Origin: Ostrea edulis
Taxonomy: Eukaryota
Direction: 5' to 3'
Length of the DNA: 64,000 nucleotides
NCBI RefSeq assembly: GCF_947568905.1
Contig: NC_079164.1
Location: forward strand, 100,564,001-100,628,000
Part shown: positions 9,876-48,451 of the stretch, in pieces
How positions within the stretch are numbered: the stretch's first letter is position 1
Layout of the letters: each line of letters starts with the position of its first letter
The notes under the pieces: generated by a model
Told to the model about the DNA's origin: nothing
Databases searched by the model: none
Seen by the model: the letters and a program-made list of their open reading frames with translations, nothing else
Program-made: the position numbers and the translations under genes

Positions 9876-10149
9876 GCTGTAGATGAGGTGCCACAAATTT
9901 AGCTCATGCGTGGCGCTCAGGGCCGTAGCAGGGAGGATTCTTTATCGTGCCAACGTCTGCCGCGACACGGGACTTCGGTTATTAAAATATTACTCAAAAG
10001 ACCTACAATTCTTATTGTAAGTGCCATGCGTTTGGTCAAGGAGCAAGCACTACCTATTTTTACGTCTTATGTTTAACACGAGTGGGGCTCAAACCCACGA
10101 CCTTTCTTCACGAAACGAACGCTTAAACCACTGAGTCACCGCGACCGGT
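9875..10149 (-). mobile_element. Second copy of the same SINE family, 3'-truncated, inverted and abutting the first
   Basis: Reverse complement reads accggtcgcggtgactcagtggtttaagcg...gtttgagcccc...aaacataagacgtaaaataggtagtg...gtcccgtgtcgcggcagacgttggcacgataaagaa...aaatttgtggcacc. Confidence 0.75.
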
Positions 10150-13200: not shown

Positions 13201-14713
13201 GCAACCAGTTCCTACAATAATTAATGGTAAGAAATATATGGTAAACCCGTTGTTTATTGGTCTCCTAAAGAATTACTTTGCAAACGCAGGCCTTGATATG
13301 AAAACAGGACATTCTAAAAGCGCAAACGGAAAGAAGACTGCCCAAAATGTGAATATGATTGACAAGAAACAGAGATTTCAAACGAAGTCTCAAGGAAAAC
13401 GCAATGAGATAAAAATGTCAGATACTCAAACGAATAATGGAGGAGTGGGAAAGGGACAAAATCCATTTCCAACAAGAAATGTAATACAAGCACGGATCCT
13501 CAACGAATCGTCTGTGAACAATCAAAAAACACAAACTCAAGACATGAAAACTACCAGAAAAATAGATATAGGTGCGCACCCTAGTACAAAAATTCCCAAT
13601 GCTAGATATACCACTAAAGCAACTACTCATCCATACAGTTCATCGTTAAGTAACGATTATTCAAAAAAGACCACCCAACCACACACGCCGTATGTACACA
13701 CTATTCGTGTTACAAGTACAACCACAAAACCAACGACTGCGTGGAATACAGCGAGAATGAGAAGTACACCTCCACCTTCATCCATTCCCAAACCCTCACA
13801 ACCACAAAGTGTGATAAAAACTACTACACATACAACCATAAAACCGCCATTACCAGTTACACAGACAACAACCACTGCACCTAAGAGGAGAAAGGCACTC
13901 TTGATGCCCTTCAGGAAGATGCCTGTAAAACAGATGATAACCCAACCTATTACAAAACCAACACCATATCTTCCGACCCCAATTATTCACAGAATCCCAA
14001 GCGCTTCCAATGCTAATATATCAACAACATTATCTCAGAATCTCTCTACAAATACTCCGAGGACATTTACCAAAGAACCAACGATACATGCAAAGGATGC
14101 TACCACTACACGTTCCACATACCCTTCCATGACCAAGGTAACGACATATGCACCTACATTAACTTTCCAACCTTCTGGAGGGACACAGACTGTTATTGAT
14201 ACACCATTAAAGCCGGAAACACAGCTTTCTAATCCATTCAATGATAGTTCATCGATTAATAATACAAGCTCTACGACGAAAGTCGTTCCTTCAGTAAAGA
14301 CCACCACTCCCCCTGGGTCTACACCCAAAGGCATTACCGTGGCAAAGAATACCACTCTTTCTGGTTCAAACAAACTACGGACGCCGGATCAATTATCTAA
14401 TCCTTCACAGAAGCAGACCCAAAAGAAGACAGAGCCAAAGGGAAAAAGAAAGGAACAGACAACTAGTCCCATCGACATTCCAAAGAAGAAACCCGTGAAC
14501 GTACGACTTGGATTCGAACTCAATCATTTTAGGCATACTGATATGAAATCTCAAAAGGAAAGTAATAAACTGATCGATGGTGAAGGAGTATTATTTGGTG
14601 ATATTTTTAGATACAGTAATGGATTGCATCCTTCCGGGAGGGTAGGAGTTCATAAAGGTTTTGCTGGATTCAACAACCGCGTAAACGACGTGGAATTATT
14701 AGTGTTGAGGTAG
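10283..14713 (+). CDS. Exon 2 (4431 nt) of an orphan secreted Q/S/T/P/N/H-rich protein, about 1500 aa in total, with a Thr/Pro mucin-like C-terminal third
   Basis: 4.4 kb stop-free in AT-rich DNA; ttcctttttcag acceptor just after an in-frame TGA (10268); AATAAA at 14875. Confidence 0.85.
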   Translation, partial: KAHGTTRQTTQPGRLNRHVNTVSQGTSSKVRIPETRQAALMGNKGSSPQMMTMMPGYFLSKFPSTRATMAPGIQRSSLGSPHPFNTNEPRHGVVGFLMQTTPSPRLKMIQSVSAIVRKEFVPPAQERIPIKRSDQPSHSVTVNSPFRQLVNSRGTEISQTPSSNTLQNGPFSPRGFPGRVKHTHVYNNLQNARIQQQGKEHAHTSPSNVLQNGNSNQHSLSSRTGPPRTPPNVSQNLPVQQHMSRVKDVKTSSRIVQNPQHQPSQKMKHVKMSLFHALQSPSFAPQNAPQNRIDNAQTSVVSHNQPASKNTVPITKKHGQTAVKMQNQSGHQLSTPIRAGHTQTSSNVVQNPPVLQHIPPRAQTLTSVYQNPSNLRHVLPRKIKHTNDPLHSIPTHSQQLVNSRGTEISQTSSSNNGPFSSQGFLGGVKHTHVSNNLQNARIQQDVQQQGKEHVHASPSNVLQNGGRIHHSSSSGIEPPQNLLDFLQSLPTAHQVPGLRDVQTSSRMFRNSSIPQYDPPRKIEQVRTPSYNASKTHLTVPHKVASSSRIRDAPTSYAVPQNLVPQTVTPRSMGHSQTSSTGLRKPPFPQHEAPQRNERTQTLSNIFQTTLNPQKSTMKMEQAKTAPPYDLSTSHTSRHVSPQGMEHRTKALQTPSISNRLASDKKNPHDISSSSVIRNQHTSQNQIKMENSHTLSSNIIRKLPVYQNVAARKMEPRQTKSALISSTNIVESIPFPLQETRRVKEPRGIRHAQTSPSNALYTSPIPNSLTPGRVEWTQKTSPNSLINGRQENVAPKGVENAHISNSNILLNLLVDQQELPQGMKNAQISSANIIRHLPVDQQVLPRRMKHKQISSANIVRYLPIDERAPRRQMRHVQFSSFSNVQIPNIPKQMKSREINNMQFSPPNTLSNVPVRQEAIAKEIAAVQTPSSQKRAIQTKQQQKRQVISNSQLGEQANSKVQTTSHRKQRGLPKAQPVPTIINGKKYMVNPLFIGLLKNYFANAGLDMKTGHSKSANGKKTAQNVNMIDKKQRFQTKSQGKRNEIKMSDTQTNNGGVGKGQNPFPTRNVIQARILNESSVNNQKTQTQDMKTTRKIDIGAHPSTKIPNARYTTKATTHPYSSSLSNDYSKKTTQPHTPYVHTIRVTSTTTKPTTAWNTARMRSTPPPSSIPKPSQPQSVIKTTTHTTIKPPLPVTQTTTTAPKRRKALLMPFRKMPVKQMITQPITKPTPYLPTPIIHRIPSASNANISTTLSQNLSTNTPRTFTKEPTIHAKDATTTRSTYPSMTKVTTYAPTLTFQPSGGTQTVIDTPLKPETQLSNPFNDSSSINNTSSTTKVVPSVKTTTPPGSTPKGITVAKNTTLSGSNKLRTPDQLSNPSQKQTQKKTEPKGKRKEQTTSPIDIPKKKPVNVRLGFELNHFRHTDMKSQKESNKLIDGEGVLFGDIFRYSNGLHPSGRVGVHKGFAGFNNRVNDVELLVLR

Positions 14714-29959: not shown

Positions 29960-30467
29960 ATCAACTTAGTCCACTTCAAAATTGACTCACCAATCATCTG
30001 TAAAATCGATATAAAATTCGCCAACAATCACCAATCACCTGTAATATCGATATAAACTTAGCAAACAAATTACTTACACAAGTTTGTTTTTTCGTATTGT
30101 AGATATGACAGTGTTTTGTAATTATGATAAGTTCTGTTGAACATATGTCAAAAAGGTCCGGATATCCGGAAGTTGTCATTTCTAGAGAAAACATGCAAGT
30201 TAATTTTTGTACATGTGAATTACATACAATTTACCGGAAATGTTAAACAACGTCTTTCTGACAATTTTGGATTGTGAAAGTATCCTTTTAATACCTATTT
30301 CTTGTCAGTTATATACAGTGTTTGCTTAATCTATGAATTTGTGAGGGTAATACCAGAGGAAGGCAACTGCCGTTAGTTACGTCACGTCCATTGATATATC
30401 GTTACTGAAAATCAGATATATAGCAAAGTGTTTTCATTTTTCGAAATGCGTGTTCGTTACTTCTAAG

Positions 30468-31607
30468 ATGTATTGCTATAGTACTAATGAGTCAGTGAAG
30501 CATTGGAACCAGATCGTTTCGGTATCCAGACTGCCGTTCAACATCATCCTCGGATGTCTCCTTGTCGTAGGAGTTCTTGGAAATTCAGTCGTGGTGCACG
30601 TGTGTCGCCTAAAACAAAAGAGGGGCAACCGGTTCTACATCCTGCTATTGGCTCTCCTAGACATCCTAACCTGTGTAGATACAGTGCTCAGTGTTATATT
30701 TTTTAACTCCTATGGTGTAAACTTTCCATCAAATGTGTTGTGTAAAATAATCACTTATTTCATGTGGACGACACCGTCATCATCCTCGATTATGATACTG
30801 ATTATCGCATTGCAAAGGTTTCTTCTCGTCTACAAACCAACCAAACGTTATCTGGATCCGCGTCATCATCGAATCATCGTCGTCCTTATTGTTCTACTCG
30901 TTCCACTTGTCATTGCTTTTCCGATGTGTGTTTTTTCTGGAACTGTCGAAATGAAACTCTCATTGTCAGATGGGAGAAATATGACAAAATGTTCCTGTGA
31001 GCCCAGTTCCGGACAATACAAGGGAATTGAAAAAAGCTACTTGGTTTTTCTTTTCATCCTTTCTCTTCTTCTGATAATGATAACAACACTTCTTTACATT
31101 CCAGTAGGAATTGTAATTCTAAGAAAACGCAAAGAATCCAAGACATCAAAGGACATTCCTTCTAATTCGATGGATGATTTGGACACGGCTACCTCTGATT
31201 CAACTGACGTAAAAACCACGCTGAGAGAGGAGACACAGAAGAAACGCAGACGACCAAATAGTACGCTGAATTTCCACATGATGTTCGGGGTAATCGTCCT
31301 CACTTACCTTTTGGCATACATACCGACGTTCTGTATGCTTCTAATCCAGAGAGGAAAACCTGGATTCTGGATAGGGATGTGGGGCTGGGAGTTGACTATT
31401 CTGTTGCTCTTCAGACGATTTCATCTCGTCTCCAACATCATCAACCCGTTTGTCTATGGGTATTTTGACATCACGTTCAGAAATTATTATGTGTCTCTTC
31501 TGAGTGCAGTGTTTTGCCGTTGCAGGTCTGCGAATTCGTCTTTATCTAACTGCAACCAAGGTACGAATTCGAATGAGAACGAATTAACAGGTAGCACGAA
31601 CTACTAA
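30468..31607 (+). CDS. Intronless class A (rhodopsin-like) GPCR, peptide-receptor-like, 379 aa from the first ATG
   Basis: Seven hydrophobic helices; GN (TM1), LAxxD (TM2), extracellular Cys before TM3, QRF in place of DRY, AYIP (TM6), NPFVY (TM7). Confidence 0.92.
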   Translation: MYCYSTNESVKHWNQIVSVSRLPFNIILGCLLVVGVLGNSVVVHVCRLKQKRGNRFYILLLALLDILTCVDTVLSVIFFNSYGVNFPSNVLCKIITYFMWTTPSSSSIMILIIALQRFLLVYKPTKRYLDPRHHRIIVVLIVLLVPLVIAFPMCVFSGTVEMKLSLSDGRNMTKCSCEPSSGQYKGIEKSYLVFLFILSLLLIMITTLLYIPVGIVILRKRKESKTSKDIPSNSMDDLDTATSDSTDVKTTLREETQKKRRRPNSTLNFHMMFGVIVLTYLLAYIPTFCMLLIQRGKPGFWIGMWGWELTILLLFRRFHLVSNIINPFVYGYFDITFRNYYVSLLSAVFCRCRSANSSLSNCNQGTNSNENELTGSTNY

Positions 31608-32597
31608 CAGCGGAAGAGTTTTTTATATGTGGACTGTAAAATACGAACCAATACATAGATTCCTAGACACTTTCCTTCAAATCTCAATTATAAATTTCAC
31701 ATAGGCTTTTGTAAACTCTTAATGTAAATTTCACATAGGTTTTTGTAAGCTGGGATGCATATTTGGTGAAATATCACTATACATATATTGTTTGATGTTA
31801 TTCAGTGTTAATATAATTGTTATCTTGAAAATTAAGGCTTATATTATCTATATACAGAATAAACCATTGTCGCAACCAAAGTCTACAGAAAGTTTCCAAG
31901 TCTCCTTCCCACAAGTACAAAAACAAAGAAAGTATACTAGTAAGACACAATATTAAGGAATTCAGTATAAAATATAGTAATCAGAATTCTTACGCCCCGA
32001 GTACAGCAGTGGTGCTCTGGCATTTGAAATCTTTGTGCTCGATTTCTTTGATTCTTATGTATTCAATTAAATTCAAAGGGCACAATCATGCAGATTTGGT
32101 AAACTTGCGAAATTCTTTTCCTTGTTGATGGTATATAAATCAATTGACCTTGAATACCTTGTCTGGCACGTAGAATCTTAACAGCTCGCATGTCGCCTTA
32201 ATGATTACTAATTTGCATTAACTTATTAATTGCGTGATGTAATTATGCCATGACTACTTCACCTACGAGAGGCTAATTGAACCCTTCTTTTAATTTCTTC
32301 AGAATAAAACTTATAACGAATTCATCCATGCAATGATAATATGAAAATTTGCTTACTTCATCCAACATTGTTTTATCTTAAAACAGTGATTCAGTTCGTG
32401 TGCAATAATTTATTGGCATTCAACAAAACAATAATAAATTAACATTTATATCTGTGAAATAAGTTAAAACATGTAACATGCACAATAGGGAATAGTCTCA
32501 TGAGGTATATTTACAAAATCAATACGATTTAAAATTTCTTGCATCCGCATACATTCGTACATTGTAAACACATTTTCGTAATACTGAATAGTGCGGT

Positions 32598-34073
32598 TTA
32601 CACGGAGAGTTTTTTGCTGATGAAAGCTCTAGTTTTGCTCTTGGAGGCCAGATTCTTGACTACAGACACCTTTCCATGTTTGGTGAGTGCAAGCTGGGGT
32701 ATATAGTTCTGAAGCCAAGCTAAGTCCGCAGGACCATGTTGACCGCCTCCAGACGGATACTGTTGAGCCGGAAGAGAGCCAACTAACAGCATTGGATCCA
32801 ACAAAGGATTGGGCGTTGTGGATTGTTTCGCTAATGCTGCTGCATACACGTCAAGAGCCACGGAGTTTCCGAACCCAGCTCCCAACCCTATCTGTGATCC
32901 AAGTCCTGTATTGGCCTGAGCTCCGCTGGTGGCTGCCTGAGGCGAAAGTCCGAGGCTGTTTAACAAAGAAGAACTACTCTGTGGACCGCCTCCTGCTGTA
33001 GTGCTATGTATCCCTGTTCCACTGTTCAATGAAAACTGTTTTCCAGTATTTCCGACGTAGTTAAGCGTTGCTGGACTTCCGGCGCCAGGTTCTATTATAT
33101 GATGAAGTAAAGCCTCCATCAGAAGAGACTTCTGGTTTATAGGTTCGATTGTATAGGTGGGGAACGGCATCGCAGTTGTGGAAGTTGTAGTGGTTGTCGT
33201 GGTGGTTGGTGTTGTGGTAGCCTCTGTAGGTGTGGTGGTAATGGTGGTGGCCGCTGTAGTTGTTGTGGTGGCTGCGGTAGTGGTGGCTTCGGTGGTAGTG
33301 GTGGCTTCGGTGGTAGTGGTAGTCGTTTCAGGTGCAGCTGTTGTTGTCGTTGTTGTTGGAGGTGGTTTTTTGTTCACTTTCACGATCATTTTTTGTAACA
33401 GGTTCAACAAAATTTGCATATTTGGGTTGGGGCTTGGCGGTTGCATTATTTTCTTTTGATACCTGATACGGTTATGTAATCCAGCCACTGTATGGACTTC
33501 ATTTTGGCTTCCAATAACGGTCACCTGGTTGCTGGGATACCTAACAGATTTAATGTTCACAAAGTGTGGCTTTGGTTGATGCGGTCTTGGAACTCGTCCT
33601 TTTGCTGGATAACCGGACGGAGACTTCTTTGGAGAGCCTCCTGAACTTTTCTTTGGTGTCTTCTTTGGAGCTTTCGGTGGGGAAGCAGGAGTCGTAGTAG
33701 GCGGCACTGGCTGCTTGGCTTTAGGTGGGGACGGTGCTTTCTTTTTAGGGCGCTTCATTTTCTTGGGTGACGTTTTCGGTACCGGCGACTTTTTGGGTGC
33801 CGGTGACTTTTTCGGTGCCTTCGGGGTTTTGGGAGCTGACGGTGCCTTGACAGGACCTCCTCCTCCTCCGTAGCCGATATTTAGTGTAGGACTGAAGCTG
33901 TTACTGATCGGAGCGTGGAAATTCAACCTGACATGAGTATCGTGTACTCCTTGAGAATGAGTTACGAAATTTGTATTCGGATTCGAGGCTGTGTTAGAAT
34001 GACTGACGAAAACAAATGGTTCCGGAGAATTGGAGTTGATATTGATATTGGAATTCTGGTTCTGATACCATCC
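32598..34073 (-). CDS. Exon 2 of secreted Pro/Lys/Thr/Gly-rich protein, paralog 1 (509 aa total)
   Basis: tttattttag|GGATGG phase-0 acceptor at 34073, frame open to TAA at 32598; homologous to 35566-37104. Confidence 0.88.
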   Translation of the reverse strand, partial: GWYQNQNSNININSNSPEPFVFVSHSNTASNPNTNFVTHSQGVHDTHVRLNFHAPISNSFSPTLNIGYGGGGGPVKAPSAPKTPKAPKKSPAPKKSPVPKTSPKKMKRPKKKAPSPPKAKQPVPPTTTPASPPKAPKKTPKKSSGGSPKKSPSGYPAKGRVPRPHQPKPHFVNIKSVRYPSNQVTVIGSQNEVHTVAGLHNRIRYQKKIMQPPSPNPNMQILLNLLQKMIVKVNKKPPPTTTTTTAAPETTTTTTEATTTTEATTTAATTTTTAATTITTTPTEATTTPTTTTTTTTSTTAMPFPTYTIEPINQKSLLMEALLHHIIEPGAGSPATLNYVGNTGKQFSLNSGTGIHSTTAGGGPQSSSSLLNSLGLSPQAATSGAQANTGLGSQIGLGAGFGNSVALDVYAAALAKQSTTPNPLLDPMLLVGSLPAQQYPSGGGQHGPADLAWLQNYIPQLALTKHGKVSVVKNLASKSKTRAFISKKLSV

Positions 34074-34455
34074 CTAAAATAAAAATAACGTTGTGTGAAT
34101 GATCATACACGTGTTTGATTTCATATAGAAAACAACAGAAGACATGGTGCAATATTGAGATTAGTCTGAGTTCCAAGCTATTATAAGGATTCATGAATAC
34201 TTTAAAAACCAAAATCTGACTCCATTGTCATAAACATGTGATGCCATCATTTCATATAGCACTTGTATGTTGTTAATGCCCGAGCAAAGAATAGTAAAAT
34301 AAAACCTCAGATATACAAACATACTCAGAATTGATATACTCAAAATTAGATAGATAAAGACATATTGTCATAGATTAGAGAATAAAAAAGGTTACTATAT
34401 AGTATATACCCTCGCAAAGGATTACATTATATATGGATATAAGAATAAGCGTTAC

Positions 34456-34509
34456 CTGTATAAGAGGGATGAATCCAACCAGAGAGAGAACCAAAGCGCT
34501 CCTTGCCAT
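34456..34509 (-). CDS. Exon 1 (signal peptide MARSALVLSLVGFIPLIQ) of paralog 1
   Basis: ATG at 34509, CAG|gtaacg phase-0 donor, TATA box 42 nt upstream. Confidence 0.82.
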
Positions 34510-34543
34510 ACTGCTGACTGTCGAACATCCCTTGTTTGTTGTT

Positions 34544-34551
34544 CTTATATA
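34544..34551 (-). promoter_or_regulatory. TATA box (TATATAAG) of paralog 1
   Basis: Same spacing to the ATG as in paralog 2. Confidence 0.65.
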
Positions 34552-35565
34552 CACAACAATCGCCTGTAGGTCAATCATATCAAGTCATTATAAATATTCA
34601 TTTATTTTACATTTTTTACAAATTATCAGGGTTACACGGTGTCGATAAGTAAATGTTAATACTCTTATGCTAATTAGGTCACTAATGTCTTGTCATCGAC
34701 AGTTTTGCAATTTCCTCTCTGACAGCGAGCGGTCAATTTTTGACAGTCAAAACCCGATTTTGTTTTCCTCGTTCCATGGTATGCTCGTTACCAATTAATT
34801 TGTAAATTATTGTTTTTGTCATCATTAATTAGTCATTAATTTATCGAATCTATTACACACATGTTAAAGTGGCTGTTCTCGAAGATGGTAACCCCTTTGA
34901 AGCATCGTTTGCATATTGCATGAATTAAATAGTCCTTTGATATGATACATGCGTTCACAGTGACAATCATTTCCTTGCATTTCTTTTAATTACTAATAAT
35001 GATGTATGCAAAATATTTGTGAATAATATTTTGTCCTCAAGCAATAATATCCTTTGTCAGAAATATGAACGTAGTGTGTTGTTAAATATTCCATTTGCAA
35101 GAAAATGTCTTAGTTATATCCCGAAATCAGTGAGCAACACTGGCGTTTGTCGTTTTCTGTTCGTTGGTAATTTTTCTCCATGCATTTATTTCATTCCCAT
35201 GAAACACCATTCCGGAAATAAATAATTGGAGACTGCATTTAAATTTAAAGGCTTTATTCAATAAAAGGCCAAATCAACAGGACAATAAAACACAAATAAA
35301 TAAATAACACGGAGAACACCACAATATTCCTGCAGTTTATCACATTCGTACCCCAGAAGACGGATTTCATACATGTCTGTTTTGTTTCGAAAGTATGAAA
35401 ATCTTTTGATACGGCAAACATATGTTCTGGTCACTGATCGTACCTAATACTGATAAATAAGTAACTATCACAATGCTTCTTCAACTAAAGAAGAAGCATT
35501 CAATGTTAAGGTGGTTTTGACTGAGACACGAATATTTGAAGAACAGTTGGAAAGTCAAGATGACC

Positions 35566-37104
35566 TCACTTCAGGATCTTTCTTTTGCCGTAACCCCCGG
35601 AAATGACCTTGACAGGTGCTCGTTTATGAAGAGCCAGTTGAGGCATGTATTTGTTCAACCAGGTGAGATCGACAGCCCCAGCAGTACCTGCCGGAGCAGG
35701 GGTAATTCCAGGTAATCCGGCGCCGGTGCCGTAGGCTCCGGATATACTTCCACCAGCTGCAAGAAGATCAAGCTGAGCCACTGGGTCAAGGTAAGGTGGA
35801 GGTGTGGTAGGTCCCTGCTGTGCAGCACCCAAGATGTCTAAGGTGGCCTGATGACCTGCTCCCGAATTGGCGCTCATAGAAACCGCTTTCTGACCTCCTC
35901 GTCCGTAAACGTCCAGCACTGCCGCTTGCTGTGTCTGTACGTTAGAACCGGCTGTGAGTTGCGCTAAGAGGGCTTCCAACAGCATTGAATTCTGGGCAAA
36001 CGAGAAAGGTGTGGTTGTGGCCTCTGTAGTGGTTGTGGTGGTAGGCTCCGTGGTGGTGGTTGTGGCCTCGGTAGTGGTGGTGGTGGTTGTAGGTTCTGTT
36101 GTAGTCGTGGTGGCCTCAGTAGTGGTAGTGGTTTCCGCTGGAGTTGTGGTGGCTTCAGTGGTGGTGGTGGTAGTGGTATCTGGTGGGGGTGTAGTTTGTG
36201 GTGCGTGGTTGACTTTCACAACCATTTTCTGAAGCAAGTTCAATAATAATTTAAATTGCATTCCCTGCATAGGGTTGGGCTTGGGAACGACTTTCTTCTG
36301 GTATTTTACATTATTGTAAAGTCCAGCAACGGTGTGAACCTCGTTTCCATTTCCGATGACCTGGACATCATTGCTTGGGTATTTTATGGCCTTGATATTG
36401 GTGTACCGAGAGCCACCCCATCTTCCATATCCGCCTTGGCCACCCCCTCCCTGCTGTTGACCTCCCTGTTGTCCGCCCTGACCGCCGGTTTGGGCGCCTC
36501 CCTGGGTCTGGATTCCACCAGTAGCACGATAGCTCTGGGTGACCTTCTGAGTTCCTCCTGCGTTGTTATTAGGCATGTGCACACCCTTGCCTCTCACATT
36601 ATTGTGAGCCCCGACGACGTTCATCATGTTTTGTGGGAAATTGTTGTTGAAGACAAGGTTCATGGGAAGACCAGAAACCTTTTTACTGCCAGCTCCGGCA
36701 CCTCCCGATGACCCCTTAGGTGGGGAGCTCTTGGGTGCTTTTTGCTTAGGAGCCTTGGACTTCTTCGGAGAAGGGGTCTTCTTTTTGGGCTGTGGTCTCT
36801 TCCCCTTTTTAGGAGCCTTCTTTGGTGACTTCTTCTTGGGTGAAGCTGAGGGACTTTTGGGTGCGGGTCCTGCGCCACCGAAGCCGCCGATATTCAGTGT
36901 TGGTACAAATTTGTTCTTGATGGGAGCATGGAAGTTGATGCTGACCACGGTATCCTTAGTGGAGTGGACTACAGTTTTTGCGGTCTTTGGTTTTGGTGCC
37001 GGGGGCTCTGGAGCGGGTGCAGGTGGCGGATCATAAAACCCGGTGTTTACGTTGACATTGTTATTCAGATTCTGGTTCTGGTTTGCGTTAGACCACCACC
37101 AGCC
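35566..37104 (-). CDS. Exon 2 of secreted Pro/Lys/Gly/Thr-rich protein, paralog 2 (531 aa total)
   Basis: tatttctacag|GGCTGG phase-0 acceptor, frame open to TGA at 35566; shares several motifs with paralog 1. Confidence 0.88.
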   Translation of the reverse strand, partial: GWWWSNANQNQNLNNNVNVNTGFYDPPPAPAPEPPAPKPKTAKTVVHSTKDTVVSINFHAPIKNKFVPTLNIGGFGGAGPAPKSPSASPKKKSPKKAPKKGKRPQPKKKTPSPKKSKAPKQKAPKSSPPKGSSGGAGAGSKKVSGLPMNLVFNNNFPQNMMNVVGAHNNVRGKGVHMPNNNAGGTQKVTQSYRATGGIQTQGGAQTGGQGGQQGGQQQGGGGQGGYGRWGGSRYTNIKAIKYPSNDVQVIGNGNEVHTVAGLYNNVKYQKKVVPKPNPMQGMQFKLLLNLLQKMVVKVNHAPQTTPPPDTTTTTTTEATTTPAETTTTTEATTTTTEPTTTTTTTEATTTTTEPTTTTTTEATTTPFSFAQNSMLLEALLAQLTAGSNVQTQQAAVLDVYGRGGQKAVSMSANSGAGHQATLDILGAAQQGPTTPPPYLDPVAQLDLLAAGGSISGAYGTGAGLPGITPAPAGTAGAVDLTWLNKYMPQLALHKRAPVKVISGGYGKRKILK

Positions 37105-37396
37105 CTGTAGAAATAATAAATAATACGTAGATTTAAAACACATTTCTTAAATTGCTTTTTTGTGAAAATTCATATACGGAACGAAAAGCAAATTAATATC
37201 TATATAATTTAGTAAAAGTAAAACTTAATTTCGTTTGAAAGACCATAATCTAGCAAAATTTACGTCAATTTGGAAAATATCCAATCTTCACTGCGTTTGA
37301 AATAGAATAGGATAGAAAGTGTTGATAACTTTGTGTAAATGCGGTCATGAGACGTGAAGCATAAGATCTACATATCAAATAATAAAAGCTACTTAC

Positions 37397-37453
37397 AGCT
37401 ACTGAAGGCAACACGACAACCAAACACACGAAAGCAAAACAAGACGGTGCCAT
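37397..37453 (-). CDS. Exon 1 (signal peptide MAPSCFAFVCLVVVLPSVA) of paralog 2
   Basis: ATG at 37453, GCT|gtaagt phase-0 donor, TATA box 43 nt upstream. Confidence 0.85.
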
Positions 37454-37488
37454 GTTGGATGGAGTACCGAAACACAGAACATTCGCTC

Positions 37489-37496
37489 TTTATATA
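37489..37496 (-). promoter_or_regulatory. TATA box (TATATAAA) of paralog 2
   Basis: Consensus TATA directly upstream of the signal-peptide exon. Confidence 0.7.
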
Positions 37497-40069
37497 CCTT
37501 ATGCTTGTCCCAAAGGTCGACATATTACCTGTCATTGATATCAGTGCACTTTAATTAATTTCATTATTGAAAATCATAATTCGTTGTTCGTGAGTCCTAG
37601 GAATCGGTACCCCCTACACGAAGCGCATGACTTGTTCCTGATGAATATTCATGAACCTCGGAGCATTTCCATCTCCATAAGCATGACAACGTAGGTCGCT
37701 GCTTGACGTGTAAAGCTGATCGCTGTCTTGTTATATCATTAATTTCCTTGACACCGTTTGGTACATCTTCATTAACATAAATTGATTATGTTTTACAAGC
37801 ATTGTTCATGTTCTGTAATTAATGGCCATCAAATTTATTTAAAAATTCAAAATATTTCCATTAGCGCGCAATGATCTTGAATGAATGACCTTTGACCCTC
37901 TGAGATCTAGAACTCTTTGAACCATTGGAGGAACATAATGCTTTATTTTATAAAGTTGTCAATGAAAAGTTATATTACTAGGATTTGTTCGGCTTATTTC
38001 AGAAGGTAAGTTTATGTTTATTTTCCACAACTAATTTAGATATTCCACCGCCACAAATTGTTGGTGTATAATAACTCGCCTATTCGTGTGTCTGTTTGTG
38101 TGTCTTTCGTAGTAATGAAATGGGCATCGTGTATAGAGTACAGTTTTACTTTCCAGTCAGACTTGTAACAGCTAGAGGTTAATGAAGAGAAGAAGAAACT
38201 ATTGATTGCAGACAGAAGACAAAAATGACATGGTCCCCATACAGAGCCAAGTTCGCATAACCTTCGGAATTTCACTATAAATTGCAATTGCGATAAAGAC
38301 ACTTCGTGGTCGCGTCGGAAATCAGTGATAAGTTTGGCCGTGTTCTCGAGTACTTGTTGTCTGGGATTTGTTGCATGAAAATGTATCGTCAGCCTCAACA
38401 TCGAGTCAAGCGGGAACAAATTGAACCCCTTTCAGTAATGTAGAATTTAAAATAATATTAAAAATGATACTTGTATGGTTTGTAGTATTTTATATCACTG
38501 TAAATCAATATACCTTTAGCGTGTATATCCTGGATATTTGATGCGAGTTACAAATGATTGAAAGAGAAATCTACAATAATGTCTAATTGCTTTCATCCTT
38601 TTCAATAAGGTTGAATTCCAATAAAACTGGAAACCATTTAGGGACTATTTATGGTTGACCTTACTAATGTCTGTCCGTGTAAAACATTACAATGTACATA
38701 TTAAAACGAACTCTAGATTTCTAACAAACTTACTTTTATATACGTAAATCGATGCCTGTCGAAAATAGAAAGCTGGCGATAACATTGATTGTTTTAAAAT
38801 AATTGTTTATTACGTCACAAAGTGAACCATTTTCCACGATTTTTCCAAATTCTAAATTCATATACAATGGAGCGCATGCGTCATCTGGCACGGATTGTAC
38901 ACTCGGATCGCCTTGGCCGATTCCATCTAGTTAGATATAGGGTACCGGAATTTACCAATGTTTGCCGAATGACAGATTTTACATGTACGTATGTAGTTGC
39001 TCACTGTATGCGTGAACATTGTATGATCACGCATGCGCTAAGTGTTTACCAACCGAAAGTACATGTTTAAAATGTACCAGAGACGAAATTACGTCATGTT
39101 CGTGACGTCACAACTAAATGATGGCCTCATAATGTTTTTCTGAACTTATAAGTCAAGATCCCATTCGGATCACATTCGTCCTTTTCCGTAACAGTTTGTA
39201 GTTATGGAAATACCCAAGTAGTTACAATTGGTCAAGATCCGTGTGTATTCGAAAGCAAACTTCCATCAGAGATGTAGAAGTGTATTCGATATATCTTTAA
39301 GTATAACTGGTTTTTAATTTGGCGCATCGCAAACAAAGCGATATATCTAATAAAATATATACGAGATAGACATATCATGTAAAATAAAACCACGGACATT
39401 TGAACAACTAACATATATATTGTATTTTCCTATGTATTGAAACTCCTGTAAAAGAATGCTGGTCGATAATACTGTCAAAAAGTAGATAATTGTTAGATTT
39501 CCAATTGTATTCAAGCGGCATTTTGTACAAATTTCATAATTTGTAATTTGACTTGGTACAAAACATTATGTATTATTGGTACAAAACATTATTGGTATGA
39601 AATCATTTGAACAAAATGTTGTTAATTTCAAATAAAATCTTCAAATCTGGTTGGTAAACATCCTAACATTACACGACTAGTATTTCACCTAGGCGTCAGA
39701 ATACATGCCGTCACGTACAATGTAGAATGTATACGCTTATTTCAATTCCAGTGGCGGTAATGAATTTGTATATAATTGATTATGATTACAGTCAACATTA
39801 TCATGCAAATAGACTTTTTTATATACTTGAAAGCTAATTACCTGTTTGCATTAAATTTGGTGCATACCACGGGATGCATTGAATTTGATTAATATTTAAA
39901 CAACTCAGACCTTATGATTAACATATAGACAGAAGTCGGAAAAACTGCAATTTTTGCAATGTTTTCAAAATATTTTTTCATGTACAAGAATCCTCTTTAG
40001 TACTTGTTCGTAAAACGTTCATTATCTACACGTGTTCTGTCGTAGAATTTCAATATACATATAATTATT

Positions 40070-42237: not shown

Positions 42238-42388
42238 TCAGTCCCCTCCCGCTGCCGTTTTGTTGCGTTCGTGTGTGTGTAGTTTCCGGTAGAGACTTTG
42301 TACATAGGTGAAGACGCACTTCCAGTCTGGCTTCTGCATGCGGACCATGTCCTCCACGTCCAAGAGTGGGGCAATGTCTGCACATTTC
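42238..42388 (-). CDS. SMTN-like: Ig-smoothelin-like gene, last coding exon (end of CH domain: LLDVEDMVRMQKPDWKCVFTYVQSLY...)
   Basis: tgtgtttag acceptor, phase 2; DxEDMV...PDWKCVxTY is the smoothelin-type CH signature; TGA at 42240-42238. Confidence 0.93.
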
Positions 42389-42638
42389 CTAAACACAACA
42401 AATTTTAAAGTAAAACTCGATACTGTCGTATTCTAGACGCACTTTTTTTTTATTTGCTTATCTCTCCTATCTAAAAACTTTCGATTTTCTCTCTTGCCCA
42501 GATTTCTGACAATTTCAAGTTTAATCTTGATTTGTTTAATGAACAGTTTGCCGGTCTGGCAAGTTGCTAAATGTATTATCTTGCCACAAAGTTTTTTTTT
42601 CGGGGGAGGGTGTTATTATTTTGCTATTTCTCTACTTA

Positions 42639-42812
<174 letters not shown>

Positions 42813-43612
42813 TCATCAAATACAGAAGCCACGAGGAAAGCCAATAGAAATTTCAATTCTTTGAGTTAATTACAAAATATTTTGAAATTTAATCTGAACA
42901 TAAAATATATTAGTACAGAAAAACGAATATGTAATCAAGTGATATTGTATCATGCTAATGATTAGTATAGATAAAGTGATTATGTATATTAGATATAGAG
43001 ATATAAAAAAGGTTAGTATCACGTGGTTAAGTCCCACAACAACCTGCCCACACGTACCCCCTCCAGTTCCCGTATCGTCATACACCGCATTTGTATATCT
43101 ACGTTATGAGTTTATTGACTCCACACCAAACGTTAATGTATCTATTCTCAATGCTAATCCACATATCACCAAATGATTATCACCAAACCAAACTCAACAA
43201 TTTTTAGTAATCAAACCATAAAAAATACAGTGTTTACAGTTAAAACCAAAGCCGTTTAGAATCTTAGCTGAAATCGCAGATGTTGTACATGTTCATCTAC
43301 TACTGGTACAACAGTTCTAAGGCACGCAATACTTCTAAAGCATTCAACTCCATGCCGCTATAAACATTACGCTGTGCCTTCACAGCATAACGCCAGACCT
43401 CTACAGCATAATTACATGCTTCTAAAGCATACACTTTTGCAAATGTAGAAAGCATTCTACACAAATGGCAGCATACGAAACAAATATATGTACTTCTAGC
43501 ACTTGTACATGTACAACTTCTGCTTTATAATTCTAATCAGCGACCACGACAACCTTGGTAGCTCATGCATGACTATTCGTTTCCATGACAATGGCATGCA
43601 GTCATGCGTTAC

Positions 43613-43718
43613 CTCATATTCCCGCGTCATGGCTTTTGTCCAATCCAGTAACATTTGTTTGATTGCGCTGGGACTTCGAACCAGAGCCCTACCACCGCCT
43701 CCCCCGGGCGCTAAATTG
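43613..43718 (-). CDS. SMTN-like: Mutually exclusive exon B (NLAPGGGGGRALVRSPSAIKQMLLDWTKAMTREYE), first CH helix, canonical type
   Basis: ttttactgaag acceptor, GAG|gtaacg donor, phase 2/0; IKQMLLDW matches recalled smoothelin. Confidence 0.88.
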
Positions 43719-44483
43719 CTTCAGTAAAAGATGCACCGATTGGTTAATCTCTTGTTAAGATATACATGTACGTAACTAATGAAAAGGCTTCCTGGAAATT
43801 TGGTTATCAACTGCAACCAAATTTCTAAGAATACAAACGTAATAAAACCTGGAAAAGAAAGCTTTGTTTGTTTGTATGTGACAGGATTTTACTAAGGTAC
43901 ACAACATAGACTAAGAATGGCAAAAATGTTAGCATGTGAAGGCATTGTTATTAGCAACACATAAAACAGTTCAAAAGTTTATTTTCCAAGGCTGATGTTT
44001 AATCAGATATCTAATGCATATATAACAATCCAGATTCTTTTGACTGGCAGTGCGTCAAAAAATAGGTTCATCTGTTTTTGAATTGTTTGAGAAGATGCTT
44101 TCGTTCACAAAGTTTGAATTTCAAGGGATGCTTTTAAAACATGTTTGATAGAGACACTCGTTTGTCAGGAAATGTAAAATACAGTACAATCCAAATCTGC
44201 CGAAATTCCTCATTAGATATCCGTTATAATGAATTATCCGTTATAATGAATATCAGAAAACTGAACTGTGTAACTACATGTGTATATATCAACATGGGCA
44301 TAAAAGGGAAGCACATTAATACACAAGACAAAAATTCAAACAACACACGTAAAAAAAATCAAGTACGAAAATCAGAAATGTTAGAGATTAAAACATGGCT
44401 GTACGCGTACAACAAATATGAGCAGTGAGATATCTACAGGTTAGCGGTGAGCCGGCGCTGACCAGCAAGGCTAGCCGGTATAC

Positions 44484-44598
44484 CTCATAATCTGCCGTAT
44501 TCTTTTGACAGAATCGGAGAATTTCCTGCTTAATTGTGACAGCATTTCGCCGCAATGTGGTGGCTGCTTTTTTGGCGTACGACACAGATAATAAACCA
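44484..44598 (-). CDS. SMTN-like: Mutually exclusive exon A (GLLSVSYAKKAATTLRRNAVTIKQEILRFCQKNTADYE), first CH helix, divergent type
   Basis: catttgtgcag acceptor, GAG|gtatac donor, phase 2/0, homologous to exon B. Confidence 0.75.
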
Positions 44599-44639
44599 CT
44601 GCACAAATGACAGAGAGCATGTTAATACAGGGGTCATAC

Positions 44640-44872
44640 AGACAAACACACGGGTACAATTATTCTTAATTCACAGACAAACACACAGGTAGAATTCTTC
44701 TTAATTCACACACACGAACATACGGGCAGAATTCTTAATTCACATACACAAACACTTGGGTACAATTATTCTTATTTCACATACACAAACACACTGGTAG
44801 AATTATTCTTGATTCACAAACAAACACACTGGTAGAATTATTCTTAATTCACACACACAAACATACGGGTAT
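44640..44872. repeat. 35-37-bp minisatellite, about 6 copies (UG-rich on the transcribed - strand)
   Basis: Recurrent caaacacac.ggtagaattattcttaattcaca. Confidence 0.85.
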
Positions 44873-45725
44873 AATATGGTACATTAAATTTTCGTTTTAA
44901 AAACTTAAAAATTTGTACCAAAAAATGCACTTAAAATCTTTACTTATAGTGGCAGTTTCTGTTTTCTGTCTTTTAACAAAGATAACATGTTTTTTGTTTG
45001 TTAAGACATGTATATAGATAAGTTCAATGCCTTTCATCCTTGTTTATTCAATCTTGCAAATTAATGCTCTCTGAATACAAAACAGTATTTTTTTCCTGAT
45101 TTCAGCAAAGTTTTAATCAGATAAGCAATGATGAAGGCATGAAAAGCTGTTTGCCATTAATAAAACAACAATGCCAAAAACACTCAAATTCATGCACAAT
45201 AATAACACTTGTGTTGAAGAATTTAACAGTATTTGCAAAATAGCATCTTATGCCTGTTTGCTTTGATGTTCAAACTTGAACTTGCCTCAGCCTTGTGCAA
45301 TATATTTGTCAAAAACTCTTATAGATCTCACTGAACATCAGAATTAAATTTACAATCAAAGTACTTCTAGTGAGGTCAAATGAAATAGATTTTAATATCT
45401 AAATTTGGTATCCAATTGATCTTATTGTAGTTGTCAAGTTTCCATAAAGCAAACAGGGTTTCTACTCAGAACACTTCAATCAGATGCTAACATGATCAGA
45501 TATCCAGACTATGGAGGTCTAGAGCATCTCCTTAAAAAGTCTCAACTACCCAACTTATCATGTATCTTTTCAATGAAGTGTCCATAATTCAGATCAAGAA
45601 TAAACAATCCAGCTGAGGATTAACTTTTCAGATCAAACAATTCTGCTGTTCTTACAAAACCTACCCTTTAAACATACACGAAATTTTTTTAAATGTACAC
45701 GAAAAAATTCAAATCAAATACGTAC

Positions 45726-45795
45726 TTTGGTTTGGGAGCTGCATTGTCCATTTTCTGGAACATGGCTTTTGCCCCTTGTGCTCCCGAGGGTTTGG
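45726..45795 (-). CDS. SMTN-like: Ig-smoothelin-like exon (AKPSGAQGAKAMFQKMDNAAPKP)
   Basis: Strong polypyrimidine acceptor, AA|gtacgt donor, phase 1/2 fits both neighbours. Confidence 0.8.
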
Positions 45796-47131
45796 CTTCA
45801 AAAGAAAAAAAATCCAGATTTTGAAAATACACATCATTGGATTCAGGAAAGGAGATATTCTCTTCTTTTTTTTTTTTTTTCAAAAATGGAAAAATTCTTA
45901 CACATTTTCACTGAAAATCAAACAGTCCTCAAAGTTATGTTAAAGTATAGCTATGGTGCACTAATTTCTGTCTATCACATAACGTACTGCAGTATCTGTG
46001 ATGCACTGATGCAGCAATTGGTTACATACTGCCAATACTGTTTGCATCAAACACGAATCTATTTAGTGCCAATAATTGACTCCAGATTACACTGGGAGAC
46101 AGATGAGACACTGCCAACATGTAAAAAAAAAATCATCTCATCTTAAGTTCACTGTGCTGCTTGGGAATCCCAAAACAGCAAAACGATGTAAGCAAGATGA
46201 CGCAAAAACTGATTTGTTTTTTTTCAAATTTGATGGTGATGCATTGTTTGTTACTTGGATATTTTTATCGCGGTGCCACAAAAGCAATCATCAATACCAA
46301 AACAGTTTATATACGCAACACAGCACATCTGTAACGAGGCCCACTACTATAACATAACAAGCAACACCAGAAAAAATCCCCATGCTCAGGTTGTTCAACT
46401 AACTAAATAGCAGTGCTTTGTTCCTGCAGTCTGGCTGGTGAATTTTACATCTATCAAACCACTGATTGATATGCAACGTTAATTGTTAATTTGACACTTG
46501 ACCAATTGACCAATAAGTGACACAGTGACAGGTAGGTGTCTGTTTGACCTAATTTCTATCAGACACAACATACTGTTCCATTTAACAAGTTCTATTGTCA
46601 AACGGTCTGTATTCTTTCTTTTTCTGCAGATCCTGACCTCAAAATGCCAACACTAAAGGTCAGAGGATACCATGAATATCCAGAAAAGATAGGATGCGTA
46701 CAATGTAAATCAATCATCACGATGTTGTTAAATTATATATGTATATCAATTATATGAAAAATTATAGAGAAGTTTTTCGAGTTAATTTTCAAATCTATCA
46801 TCTTTCTGAGCTTCAATAGAAATATCAAGATCCAGCTTTGGACCATATGCAAGGAAAATTCAAGTAAAATTCAAGGGAAAACATCACCATAGATGTAAGA
46901 TTCAGCTATAATAAAACCTGTATAAGCAATTTAAGATATATCTATAGCATATCAACTCAAAGTATCCAATGACCTTAAGAAAAATTCCTATCTAGAGTAT
47001 ATCAACTCAAAGTATTCAATGACCTTAAGAAAAATTCCAAGTGGTTATTTAACTTGATTAAGTTTTAGGATTTGTTAATAAAAATGATGTGGAAAACAAG
47101 TGTACTGTGCAACAATGAAAACAACAGCTAC

Positions 47132-47272
47132 CTCCCCAGGATTGCGATTTCTGAGACGTATTTGTGATGCCGTTCCGGCTGTTCCACGACTCGGTTTTGA
47201 TGGTAATGTTACCACTGGTAACCGGTGATAAGGTATTGATCAGCTGATTGGTCAAAAACGTAGCGGCTTCTT
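47132..47272 (-). CDS. SMTN-like: Ig-smoothelin-like exon (EAATFLTNQLINTLSPVTSGNITIKTESWNSRNGITNTSQKSQSWG)
   Basis: Open 141-nt phase 1/1 exon between flanking exons; weaker splice sites. Confidence 0.65.
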
Positions 47273-48451
47273 CTATTCCATGATGCAAACCAAAAAGGAA
47301 AACACACATGTCAAACATGCTCAGACATTGTTACGGGGGGAAGTCAAGCATGCCTTCAAAATAGCTCTATACATGGGAATCAAATTCACAACTGTTACTT
47401 TACATCTTTACTCAATTGACATGGTACATATTTTGTACGACCAAGTACGTTTTATTTTCTTTCTATCCATTTACATAACAAGATGCAGTTGTTTAGTCAT
47501 AAATTGTAAATATGCATCTGGTCCCATTCAATTTAATTAGAATTTTACTGGTTTTTTTTAATTTCATACTTGACTTCCAAATATAAAAATGTCAACACTA
47601 CTTTTGATTTAAAACATCTCCATTTATCTATGAAACACTTTTTTATGAGTACTTCAATGATCATTGCTGTAAATTATGCAAGAAAGCACTCAAGAAAATC
47701 TTTTTCTAGAAGAATGAGAGAATTTGCAGAGAATGTAAATCTGAGAGATATAATACAAGTTTGAACTCAGTGAAGGGAGGAGTGTAGTTTACCTGAATTA
47801 CACTTGGAGGAGTCAGCAGGGGTTAATAATGTATCTTTGATTATTGTAGTCCGAATTACGCCATCTACCATTAAATAGAAGAAATAATAGGGGTGAGTAG
47901 GCCTGAATTAGTCCCAGATAGCTATCCAACACTAACCATTAGATGTGCAGAATGTATATATATACAGGAAGTGTGAAGAAATATATTCACCCCCACCACC
48001 CCGTTGTAAGTACTAAAACTGATCCAGAAAAGATAAATATAATTAGTCCATACAATGTATGATAAGATTAACTCATGCAAATGTGCATAATATATAATAA
48101 TGATGAAAATAAGTATGCTGTTATAGGGAGTAAGAAAAACAAGCTATCTTTCATTAAAATATCCATGCTATACATTATTTTGAAAGGTAAAATTATAGAC
48201 ACAAAACACAGCCCTATGAATACAAGTTATAGACATATACCACAGCCCTATAGATACACAGTAAAACAAGATTACAGCAAACATGATTATTATGAATTCA
48301 CTCTTACAGCGAAGTGATTTTCATTTCATGTAGTTTTTAAACATATTAAGAATTTACTAAATATGATGAATGACTTTTATAATGTATCATTGTTCTTCCC
48401 CAGCACTTCGCTATAAGCGTGTTTTACTGTGCAGAGAACAGAGCCCTATAG

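What the first reader, a model, noticed from the sequence alone, without database searches (positions are those of the whole stretch)
32598..37496. Tandem pair of orphan secreted proteins sharing unrecognised conserved motifs
Seen: both genes have a TATA box 42-43 nt before the ATG, a signal-peptide exon, a phase-0 intron, and an exon 2 starting GW. Between divergent low-complexity tracts they keep short islands in the same order: NQNxNxNxN; NFHAPIxNxFxPTLNIG; a Lys/Pro SPKK/APKK tract; (F/Y)xNIKxxxYPSNxVxVIGxxNEVHTVAGLxNxxxYQKK (33563-33450 and 36405-36290); LLNLLQKMxVKVN; a TTTEATTT tract; QxSxLxEALL; LDVY; TTPxPxLDP; DLxWLxxYxPQLALxK. The mature chains contain no Cys. I recognise no known domain. 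Inference: a modular structural protein family (shell matrix, periostracum, cement or mucus) with a polycationic block, an O-glycosylated block and beta-prone self-assembly motifs.
Basis: partly seen in the sequence, partly recalled or inferred. Interest (0 to 1): 0.72.

Follow-up and report, generated by a model that had tools for sequence, protein, structure and literature searches.

The report
Oyster-only basic mucin-like protein pair
Two neighbouring flat-oyster genes encode secreted, cysteine-free, very basic, mostly unfolded proteins. They belong to a small, strongly conserved family found only in true oysters, and its function and site of expression remain untested.

Summary
The window (Ostrea edulis) carries two tandem minus-strand genes, A at 32598-34509 and B at 35566-37453. 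Each has a TATA box, a signal-peptide exon, a phase-0 GT-AG intron and one large exon that starts with Gly-Trp.

- **Paralogy:** Neither mature chain has a cysteine.
- **Real, conserved genes:** The same B-A pair lies between the same neighbours in Saccostrea and Crassostrea virginica. dN/dS is about 0.09 with synonymous sites saturated. About 450 nt of the B promoter are conserved.
- **A third member:** Gene C (1423-aa exon) lies on another chromosome and has the same gene layout.
- **No known family:** Pfam, PDB, the ESM Atlas, a 5.8-billion-protein word search and a profile search of 1.84 billion representatives found credible relatives only in oysters. The RefSeq names (mucin-19-like, mucin-5AC-like, FNDC1-like) are compositional.
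- **Structure:** AlphaFold2 gives mostly disorder, with a weak three-strand sheet plus helix over the core island.
- **Most likely role:** A polycationic, probably O-glycosylated extracellular scaffold that assembles through the short islands.

This is an undescribed family of a familiar kind, of moderate interest.

The parts
37454..37903 (-). Gene B promoter, including TATATAAA at 37496-37489. About 450 nt are conserved across three oyster genera.
   Evidence: Three-species alignment with long invariant blocks, although coding dS is saturated.
37397..37453 (-). Gene B exon 1: a 19-codon signal peptide, MAPSCFAFVCLVVVLPSVA.
   Evidence: Read. Identical to the N-terminus of RefSeq XP_048753542.2.
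37105..37396 (-). Gene B intron, 292 nt, phase 0, GTAAGT...CTACAG.
35566..37104 (-). Gene B exon 2, 512 aa plus stop: the mature Cys-free chain, pI 10.1.
   Evidence: dN/dS 0.085-0.095 against Saccostrea and C. virginica.
36886..36936 (-). Gene B island 0, NFHAPIKNKFVPTLNIG.
   Evidence: Shared with A, C and all orthologues.
36676..36870 (-). Gene B Lys/Pro polycationic block, net charge +22 over 65 residues.
36544..36675 (-). Gene B island 1, LPMNLVFNNNFPQNMMNVVGAHNNVRGKGVHMPNNNAGG. Absent from A and present in C.
   Evidence: 90% invariant in three genera. Alignments. Weak internal similarity to the core island (hhalign P = 0.005).
36290..36405 (-). Gene B core island, YTNIKAIKYPSNDVQVIGNGNEVHTVAGLYNNVKYQKK.
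   Evidence: Three strands predicted at low confidence.
36010..36207 (-). Gene B Thr-rich (TTTTTEATTTP) mucin-type block.
   Evidence: 80% invariant in three genera.
35620..35670 (-). Gene B C-terminal motif, DLTWLNKYMPQLALHKR.
35253..35258 (-). Gene B AATAAA polyadenylation signal, about 305 nt after the stop, in a conserved 3' flank.
34544..34551 (-). Gene A TATA box, TATATAAG, 42 nt before the ATG.
   Evidence: Conserved in Saccostrea and C. virginica.
34456..34509 (-). Gene A exon 1: an 18-codon signal peptide, MARSALVLSLVGFIPLIQ.
   Evidence: The Saccostrea RefSeq model P0005 has a similar signal peptide (...NGLVLCLVGFLPLIQ) followed directly by GWY.
34074..34455 (-). Gene A intron, 382 nt, phase 0, GTAACG...TTTTAG.
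32598..34073 (-). Gene A exon 2, 491 aa plus stop: the mature Cys-free chain, pI 10.35.
   Evidence: dN/dS 0.09 against Saccostrea.
33450..33563 (-). Gene A core island, FVNIKSVRYPSNQVTVIGSQNEVHTVAGLHNRIRYQKK.
32409..32414 (-). Gene A AATAAA polyadenylation signal, about 185 nt after the stop.
30450..31607 (+). Neighbouring single-exon rhodopsin-type GPCR, used as the conserved synteny anchor. It is not part of the family.
   Evidence: 7tm_1 genes sit at the same position in L007 and L008.

Best explanation
A and B are functional paralogues of a small family restricted to true oysters (Ostreidae). O. edulis has three members: A, B and a 1423-aa relative, C, on another chromosome.

Each protein is secreted through a cleaved signal peptide as a cysteine-free, strongly basic (pI about 10), largely disordered chain. 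I read it as a modular extracellular scaffold:
- A Lys/Pro block (+22) binds polyanions such as sulfated or carboxylated glycans, acidic proteins or charged surfaces.
- A Thr-rich block is O-glycosylated and acts as an extended, hydrated spacer.
- Short, near-invariant islands mediate specific non-covalent self- or hetero-association. These are the Asn-rich NNNVNVN...NFHAPI module, the YPSN...VIG...NEVHTVAGL mini-sheet with its amphipathic LLNLLQKM helix, and the C-terminal DLxWL...PQLAL motif.

The result would be a material held together without disulfides.

Shown: gene structure, paralogy, purifying selection, synteny, taxonomic restriction, composition and charge, and lack of any known domain.

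Inferred: secretion, glycosylation, polyanion binding, island-mediated assembly, and the tissue or material involved.
For: - Complete gene anatomy: TATA box, signal-peptide exon, phase-0 intron, large exon and AATAAA signal.
- RefSeq models with the same two-exon structure in O. edulis, C. gigas, C. virginica and Saccostrea.
- A/B paralogy at E = 2e-30.
- The B-A tandem is flanked by the same smoothelin-like gene and GPCR in three genera.
- dN/dS is 0.085-0.095 with dS above 1.
- In the tree the A copies form a 100/100 clade separated from all B copies by a long branch. Within the A clade and among the B copies, Ostrea groups with Saccostrea.
- Paralogue C has the same TATA, signal exon and phase-0 intron layout, the same order of islands and no cysteines.
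- pI is 9.9-10.4, the Lys/Pro block carries +22 and the Thr block carries -8.
- AlphaFold2 gives mean pLDDT 35-38, hence mostly disorder. It places helices at LLNLLQKM, LLEALL and DLTWL, and three strands on the core island when the centre is folded alone.
- No Pfam family, no PDB relative, no Atlas look-alike.
- Only oyster proteins appeared as credible relatives in the 5.8-billion word search and in the HMM search of 1.84 billion representatives.
Against:
- All public contigs I could read are unspliced genomic DNA.
- The AlphaFold2 models are low-confidence and rest on only 7-8 sequences, so 'disordered' and 'three strands' are both weak.
- Signal-peptide cleavage was judged by eye, not by a predictor.
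- Polyanion binding, glycosylation and self-assembly are inferences from composition.
- The representative library seems to lack the A-type cluster, so absence outside oysters is strong but not absolute.
Confidence: 0.6

Rival explanations
1. This is the first reader's specific version: a structural component of an oyster hard or adhesive material. Candidates are shell framework, periostracum, hinge ligament, or the larval or adult cement that fixes the left valve. The protein would be laid down by mantle or foot glands and possibly cross-linked through Lys and Gln.
For: - The family is confined to true oysters, the cementing lineage with foliated and chalky shells.
- A Lys block and a Gln/Gly block occur in one Cys-free chain. 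Paralogue C is 23% Gly and 16% Gln with long GGQ/GGAQ repeats, like elastomeric or silk-like matrix proteins.
- The sequences are strongly conserved.
- There is a sub-threshold resemblance of the Thr tract to insect glue proteins (PF21827, 17.4 bits against a cut-off of 31).
Against: - The accessions and tryptic-type motif peptides are absent from all full texts searched and from the supplements of three oyster shell-proteome papers.
- The protein is basic and Thr-rich rather than Asp-rich or Gly/Tyr-rich like most calcite matrix proteins (my own knowledge).
- It has few Tyr, so it does not fit a DOPA-type adhesive.
Confidence: 0.3
2. It is a soft-tissue mucus or secretion component: a non-gel-forming, polycationic mucin-like protein of gill, mantle, labial-palp or digestive-tract mucus, or of the crystalline style. 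It would condense or organise acidic mucopolysaccharides reversibly.
For: - It has a mucin-type Thr block and a signal peptide, and lacks the Cys-rich VWD and cystine-knot domains.
- Its strong positive charge suits binding of sulfated or sialylated glycans.
- The absence of cysteines implies a reversible, non-covalent network.
Against: - The Thr block is short (about 66 aa), and its length and sequence are conserved, unlike typical fast-evolving mucin repeats.
- There is no expression evidence.
- It is not obvious why such a component would be confined to oysters.
Confidence: 0.25
3. It is a reproductive or developmental coat protein, for example of the egg envelope, sperm or larval surface.
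For: Lineage-restricted secreted glycoproteins are common among gamete-recognition proteins (my own knowledge). None of about 30 contig-derived cluster members inspected is spliced, which hints that assembled transcripts are uncommon in the runs sampled.
Against: dN/dS of about 0.09 is far from the rapid evolution typical of gamete-recognition proteins.
Confidence: 0.07
4. They are not functional genes: chance open frames, or decaying or untranscribed duplicates.
Against: Open frames of 491-518 codons are kept in three genera with dS saturated and dN/dS of about 0.09. The synteny, promoter, splice sites and polyadenylation signal are all conserved.
Confidence: 0.02

Closest known systems
Secreted non-gel-forming mucin-like proteins (PTS-domain glycoproteins). 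RefSeq names here: mucin-19-like, mucin-5AC-like.
   Same: A signal peptide, a Thr-rich tract likely to be O-glycosylated, and low complexity.
   Different: No VWD, C8, TIL or cystine-knot domains and no cysteine at all. The Thr tract is only about 66 aa and is conserved in length. There is a +22 Lys/Pro block and unique conserved islands. No sequence homology was detected.
Basic or low-complexity mollusc shell matrix proteins (KRMP, shematrins, mucoperlin of pearl oysters and Pinna). This comparison comes from my own knowledge.
   Same: Lineage-restricted, secreted, modular low-complexity proteins with basic and Gly-rich blocks. Mucoperlin is mucin-like.
   Different: No sequence relatives outside Ostreidae were found in any search. 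The family was not found in the oyster shell-proteome supplements searched. It lacks the cysteines and Gly/Tyr repeats of KRMP.
Drosophila salivary glue proteins (Pfam New_glue, PF21827).
   Same: Secreted, Thr-rich and possibly adhesive. There is a weak match over the Thr tract.
   Different: The score of 17.4 bits is below the 31-bit cut-off, and the match covers only the low-complexity tract. This is composition, not homology.
Polycationic partners in marine adhesives and clot-like cements (sandcastle-worm Pc proteins; the transglutaminase or lysyl-oxidase model of barnacle cement). This comparison comes from my own knowledge.
   Same: A Lys-rich block that could pair with polyanions. Lys plus Gln blocks could be enzyme-cross-linked in a Cys-free chain.
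   Different: No homology, no DOPA-prone Tyr richness, and no evidence that the protein is in cement.

Membership tests
Gel-forming mucins (MUC5AC/MUC19 type) | VWD, C8 and TIL assemblies and a C-terminal cystine knot for disulfide multimerisation | tested here: not met
   Pfam scan at E up to 10 shows none. The mature chains have 0 Cys.
Gel-forming mucins (MUC5AC/MUC19 type) | Long Pro/Thr/Ser-rich O-glycosylation domain | tested here: inconclusive
   A Thr-rich tract is present but spans only about 66 residues. Glycosylation was not tested.
[quoted passage not shown] | At least one fn3 domain | tested here: not met
   No fn3 hit in Pfam at E up to 10. In the profile search, the only fn3-like resemblance is a repeat-inflated match of about 30 residues to P0036.
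New_glue (PF21827) | Score at or above the Pfam gathering threshold of 31 bits | tested here: not met
   17.4 bits, E = 0.0038, confined to the Thr tract of B. There is no hit for A.
Linker-histone or protamine-like SPKK proteins | Nuclear protein with an H15 globular domain and no signal peptide | tested here: not met
   No Pfam linker-histone hit. An N-terminal hydrophobic signal exon is present.
Described mollusc shell matrix protein families | Detectable sequence homology to a described shell matrix protein, or identification in a shell proteome | tested here: not met
   Only uncharacterised oyster proteins were retrieved as credible relatives. No occurrences in three shell-proteome supplements. 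Two further papers had no supplements held, so this test is incomplete.
The new oyster family itself (A, B and C) | Signal exon, phase-0 intron and a single large exon. Ordered islands: NNNVNVN...NFHAPI, Lys/Pro block, YPSN-VIG-NxV-AGL core, LLxLL helix, C-terminal PQ(L/M)AL. No Cys. | tested here: met
   All three O. edulis genes and the orthologues in Saccostrea, C. virginica and C. gigas show these features.

The most novel reading that the evidence does not exclude
The family is an oyster innovation that builds a disulfide-free extracellular material tied to the oyster way of life. The most attractive candidate is the cement, or the organic sheet, that fixes and seals the shell. The Lys/Pro block would first coacervate with polyanions. 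The invariant islands would then zip chains together, and the Lys and Gln/Gly blocks would be covalently cross-linked by transglutaminase or lysyl oxidase. The Gly/Gln-rich paralogue C would be the elastomeric bulk component.
Probability: 0.15. Interest if true: 0.7.

Novelty: new variant of a known kind. Interest (0 to 1): 0.4.

Why it matters
Oysters are ecosystem engineers and aquaculture species, and the proteins of their cement, shell and mucus are only partly known. This family is confined to oysters. It has been kept under strong purifying selection since before the Ostrea, Saccostrea and Crassostrea lineages split. It has no cysteines, a large polycationic block and a few near-invariant short motifs.

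That makes it a concrete, testable candidate for how oysters build a non-covalently assembled or enzyme-cross-linked material. It also offers a compact set of motifs for biomaterials work. The very conserved 450-nt promoter of gene B could serve as a cell-type-specific driver or marker.

If expression turns out to be ordinary mucus, the finding is a tidy annotation correction. The genes are not MUC19, MUC5AC or FNDC1 relatives.

Tried and rejected
- **Spliced public contigs:** the RefSeq proteins P0008 and P0033 are on no contig in the collection. All Logan and ENA cluster members inspected start inside the intron, so they are genomic. Short contigs L014-L016 end in an adapter or run on into flanking DNA with no poly(A) tail.
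- **Literature:** accessions, motif peptides and name-plus-topic searches found nothing on these proteins. Supplements of three papers held no match, and two papers had no supplements held.
- **Word search with paralogue C:** the central region gave nothing, probably because low-complexity words swamped the candidates.
- **ESM Atlas:** no usable hit.
- **PDB profile search:** only chance hits, with E of at least 0.07.
- **Profile-search hits P0035 and P0036:** rejected as repeat-inflated chance matches of about 30 residues.
- **Bacterial hits P0006 and P0007:** rejected as Thr-tract matches.
- **Internal duplication of island 1 and the core island:** only weak support (hhalign P = 0.005 over 19 columns). 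Island 0 shows no significant similarity to either.
- **Relation to the other two-exon secreted gene in the window (10337-14713):** none by tblastn.
- **Fold search:** not run, because both models are far below usable confidence.
- **Joined signal exon plus exon 2 model:** Exons were searched by reference, and the identical RefSeq protein P0033 stood in for the joined form.


Full report
**What is there.** The window is from Ostrea edulis. Gene B's product is identical to RefSeq XP_048753542.2, 'mucin-19-like [Ostrea edulis]', and the window lies on contig C1 of the assembly at 100,564,001-100,628,000. Two large open frames on the minus strand dominate the flagged interval. Reading upstream of each gives two genes with the same anatomy.

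- Gene A has TATATAAG at 34551-34544, an ATG at 34509, an 18-codon hydrophobic exon (34509-34456), a 382-nt GT-AG intron in phase 0, and exon 2 at 34073-32598 (491 aa, starting GWY). An AATAAA signal lies at 32414-32409.
- Gene B has TATATAAA at 37496-37489, an ATG at 37453, a 19-codon exon (37453-37397), a 292-nt phase-0 intron, and exon 2 at 37104-35566 (512 aa, starting GWWW). An AATAAA signal lies at 35258-35253.

**Is the similarity real?** BLASTP with compositional adjustment gives E = 2e-30 (38% identity over 328 columns) from the core island to the C-terminus, and E = 3e-07 for the NFHAPI island. A tblastn search of the window finds only these two loci. Neither mature chain has a cysteine.

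**Are they real genes?** I could not test transcription. All public contigs I could inspect are unspliced genomic DNA. The evolutionary evidence is nevertheless strong.

- In Saccostrea cucullata (L007) and Crassostrea virginica (L008) the same two genes lie in the same order and orientation. They sit between the 3' end of a large Ig/I-set gene, which matches the smoothelin-like exons of this window at 42250-47886, and a 7tm_1 GPCR, which matches 30450-31607 here.
- Nei-Gojobori estimates on exon 2 give dN/dS of 0.085-0.095 for both A and B orthologue pairs. dS is 1.1-1.6 or saturated.
- All six exon-2 products are open and Cys-free.
- In a maximum-likelihood tree the three A proteins form a 100/100 clade separated from all B proteins by a long branch. 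Within the A clade and among the B copies, Ostrea groups with Saccostrea. Together with the synteny, this places the duplication before these genera split.
- RefSeq models with the identical signal exon and large exon structure exist in four species.
- About 450 nt upstream of gene B align almost without gaps across the three genera, with long invariant blocks. Gene A's promoter is conserved more patchily.
- B's 3' flank is also conserved.

**A third member.** Searching the whole O. edulis assembly with B, with a profile of the core island and with C itself finds exactly one more locus, G000:C8:15865451-15869719. It has the same layout: a TATA box, a 26-codon signal exon, a phase-0 GTAAGT intron and a single 1423-aa exon.

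Its product carries the same modules in the same order:
- INFHAPIQNGFYPSLN;
- a +29 Lys/Pro block;
- LPINLVINNNFPQNMMN...PNNNAGG;
- a diverged core island (KIHETVLPKNKVRIVGDRNKVRTFAGLEN);
- a QQLLQLL helix-like stretch;
- a C-terminal LGNLPQMAL.

It also has no cysteine. It is 23% Gly and 16% Gln, with long GGQ/GGAQ repeats. It repeats the N-terminal Asn module (NNNVNVNNN...N[F/M]H[V/A]xIxNNQNQ) about four times. The N-termini of A and B are therefore single copies of a repeatable module. Island 1 of B (absent from A) resembles the core island only weakly (hhalign P = 0.005 over 19 columns).

**Is it a known family?**
- Pfam gives nothing for A. For B it gives only a sub-threshold match of the Thr tract to New_glue (17.4 bits against 31).
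- The 5.8-billion-protein word search returned only oyster proteins, plus two bacterial Thr-tract artefacts.
- A profile of the 73-position core island, searched against 1.84 billion representatives, found only the family's own representative. The two other hits match about 30 residues and are significant only because the unit is repeated 7-11 times. I reject them.
- There is no PDB relative and no ESM Atlas look-alike.
- No cysteines, VWD domains or fn3 domains are present, so the RefSeq names are compositional.
- One caveat: the representative library did not return an A-type cluster, so its coverage of mollusc proteomes is imperfect.
- No paper in the library contains the accessions or the motif peptides. 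The supplements of three oyster shell-proteome papers hold none of them.

**What the protein looks like.** All members have a pI of 9.9-10.4. B divides as follows:
- residues 1-22: GW plus an Asn-rich stretch;
- 23-45: a PAPAPEPPAP stretch;
- 46-78: island 0;
- 79-143: the Lys/Pro block, net +22;
- 144-187: island 1, 90% invariant across three genera;
- 188-232: a Gln/Gly tract;
- 233-272: the core island, 82% invariant;
- 273-299: a Pro stretch plus the LLNLLQKMVVKVN helix;
- 300-365: the Thr-rich block, net -8 and 80% invariant, with conserved length;
- 366-478: an Ala/Gly/Gln region with an LLEALL helix;
- 479-512: a basic C-terminus with DLTWLNKYMPQLAL.

AlphaFold2 on the whole chain with a 7-sequence alignment gives mean pLDDT 35, with no strands and weak helices at 279-298, 373-384 and 481-486. 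Run on residues 140-302 alone, it gives pLDDT 38. It then places three short strands on TNIKAIK, DVQVIGN and EVHTVAG, followed by the helix at pLDDT of about 55. Both models are too weak for fold searches. They suggest a mostly disordered chain with a few small structured or binding-induced elements.

**How it most likely works.** These are inferences, not demonstrated facts. The chain is secreted. The Thr block is O-glycosylated and acts as a hydrated spacer. The Lys/Pro block binds polyanions. The near-invariant islands are specific contact sites for self- or hetero-assembly. Their conservation, at dN/dS of about 0.09 in an otherwise low-complexity protein, argues for defined partners. Because there are no cysteines, any network is either non-covalent or cross-linked enzymatically. 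A Lys block next to a Gln/Gly block makes transglutaminase an attractive idea, but it is only an idea.

Which material the protein belongs to remains open: shell, ligament, cement, mucus or crystalline style. Restriction to the cementing oysters and the elastomer-like paralogue C lean towards a structural or adhesive material. The basic, Thr-rich composition and the absence from the shell-proteome supplements I could search lean away from bulk shell matrix.

**Verdict.** This is an undescribed, oyster-restricted, three-member family of a familiar general kind, namely lineage-specific low-complexity secreted proteins of molluscs. It is of moderate interest, and that would rise if expression places it in cement or another oyster-specific material.

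Noticed in passing
window 37454-37903 (minus strand); L007 about 6800-7075; L008 about 9550-10000: About 450 nt upstream of gene B are conserved almost gap-free between Ostrea, Saccostrea and C. virginica, although synonymous sites are saturated. The invariant blocks include GGGTACCGATTCC, CGAATTATGATTTTCAATAAT, AATTAATTA (homeodomain-type), ATGACAGGTA (Meis/TGIF-like), GACCTTT and TAAGGTATATAA. This is a candidate cell-type-specific enhancer and promoter.
   Followed up: partly
G000:C8:15865451-15869719 (minus strand); L005:5449-9720; signal exon in L006 at about 1389-1466: This is the third family member, C. It has a 1423-aa Cys-free exon that is 23% Gly and 16% Gln, with long GGQ/GGAQ/GGH repeats, four copies of the Asn-rich module and a +29 Lys/Pro block. 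It resembles an elastomeric or silk-like protein. Its orthologues in other oysters were not retrieved.
   Followed up: partly
window 10337-14713 (+): A 1458-codon open frame encodes another Ser/Thr/Pro/Gln-rich secreted-type protein, already noted by the scan as s1-268795. It shows no similarity to A or B by tblastn.
   Followed up: partly
window 30450-31607 (+): A single-exon rhodopsin-type GPCR (7tm_1 in the orthologous loci) lies tail-to-tail (3' end to 3' end) with gene A. Its position is conserved in three oyster genera.
   Followed up: partly
L014 (JGI metagenome 3300045951, contig Ga0438279_0083806): An environmental metagenome contig carries the 3' part of a gene B orthologue from an Ostrea-like oyster that is close to, but not identical with, O. 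edulis. Its 3' flank is also conserved.
   Followed up: no
window 42250-47886 (minus strand): Exons of the upstream smoothelin-like or Ig-domain gene match the 3' exons of the 1922-1944-aa I-set gene called in Saccostrea and C. virginica. The whole block of that gene, B, A and the GPCR is collinear.
   Followed up: partly
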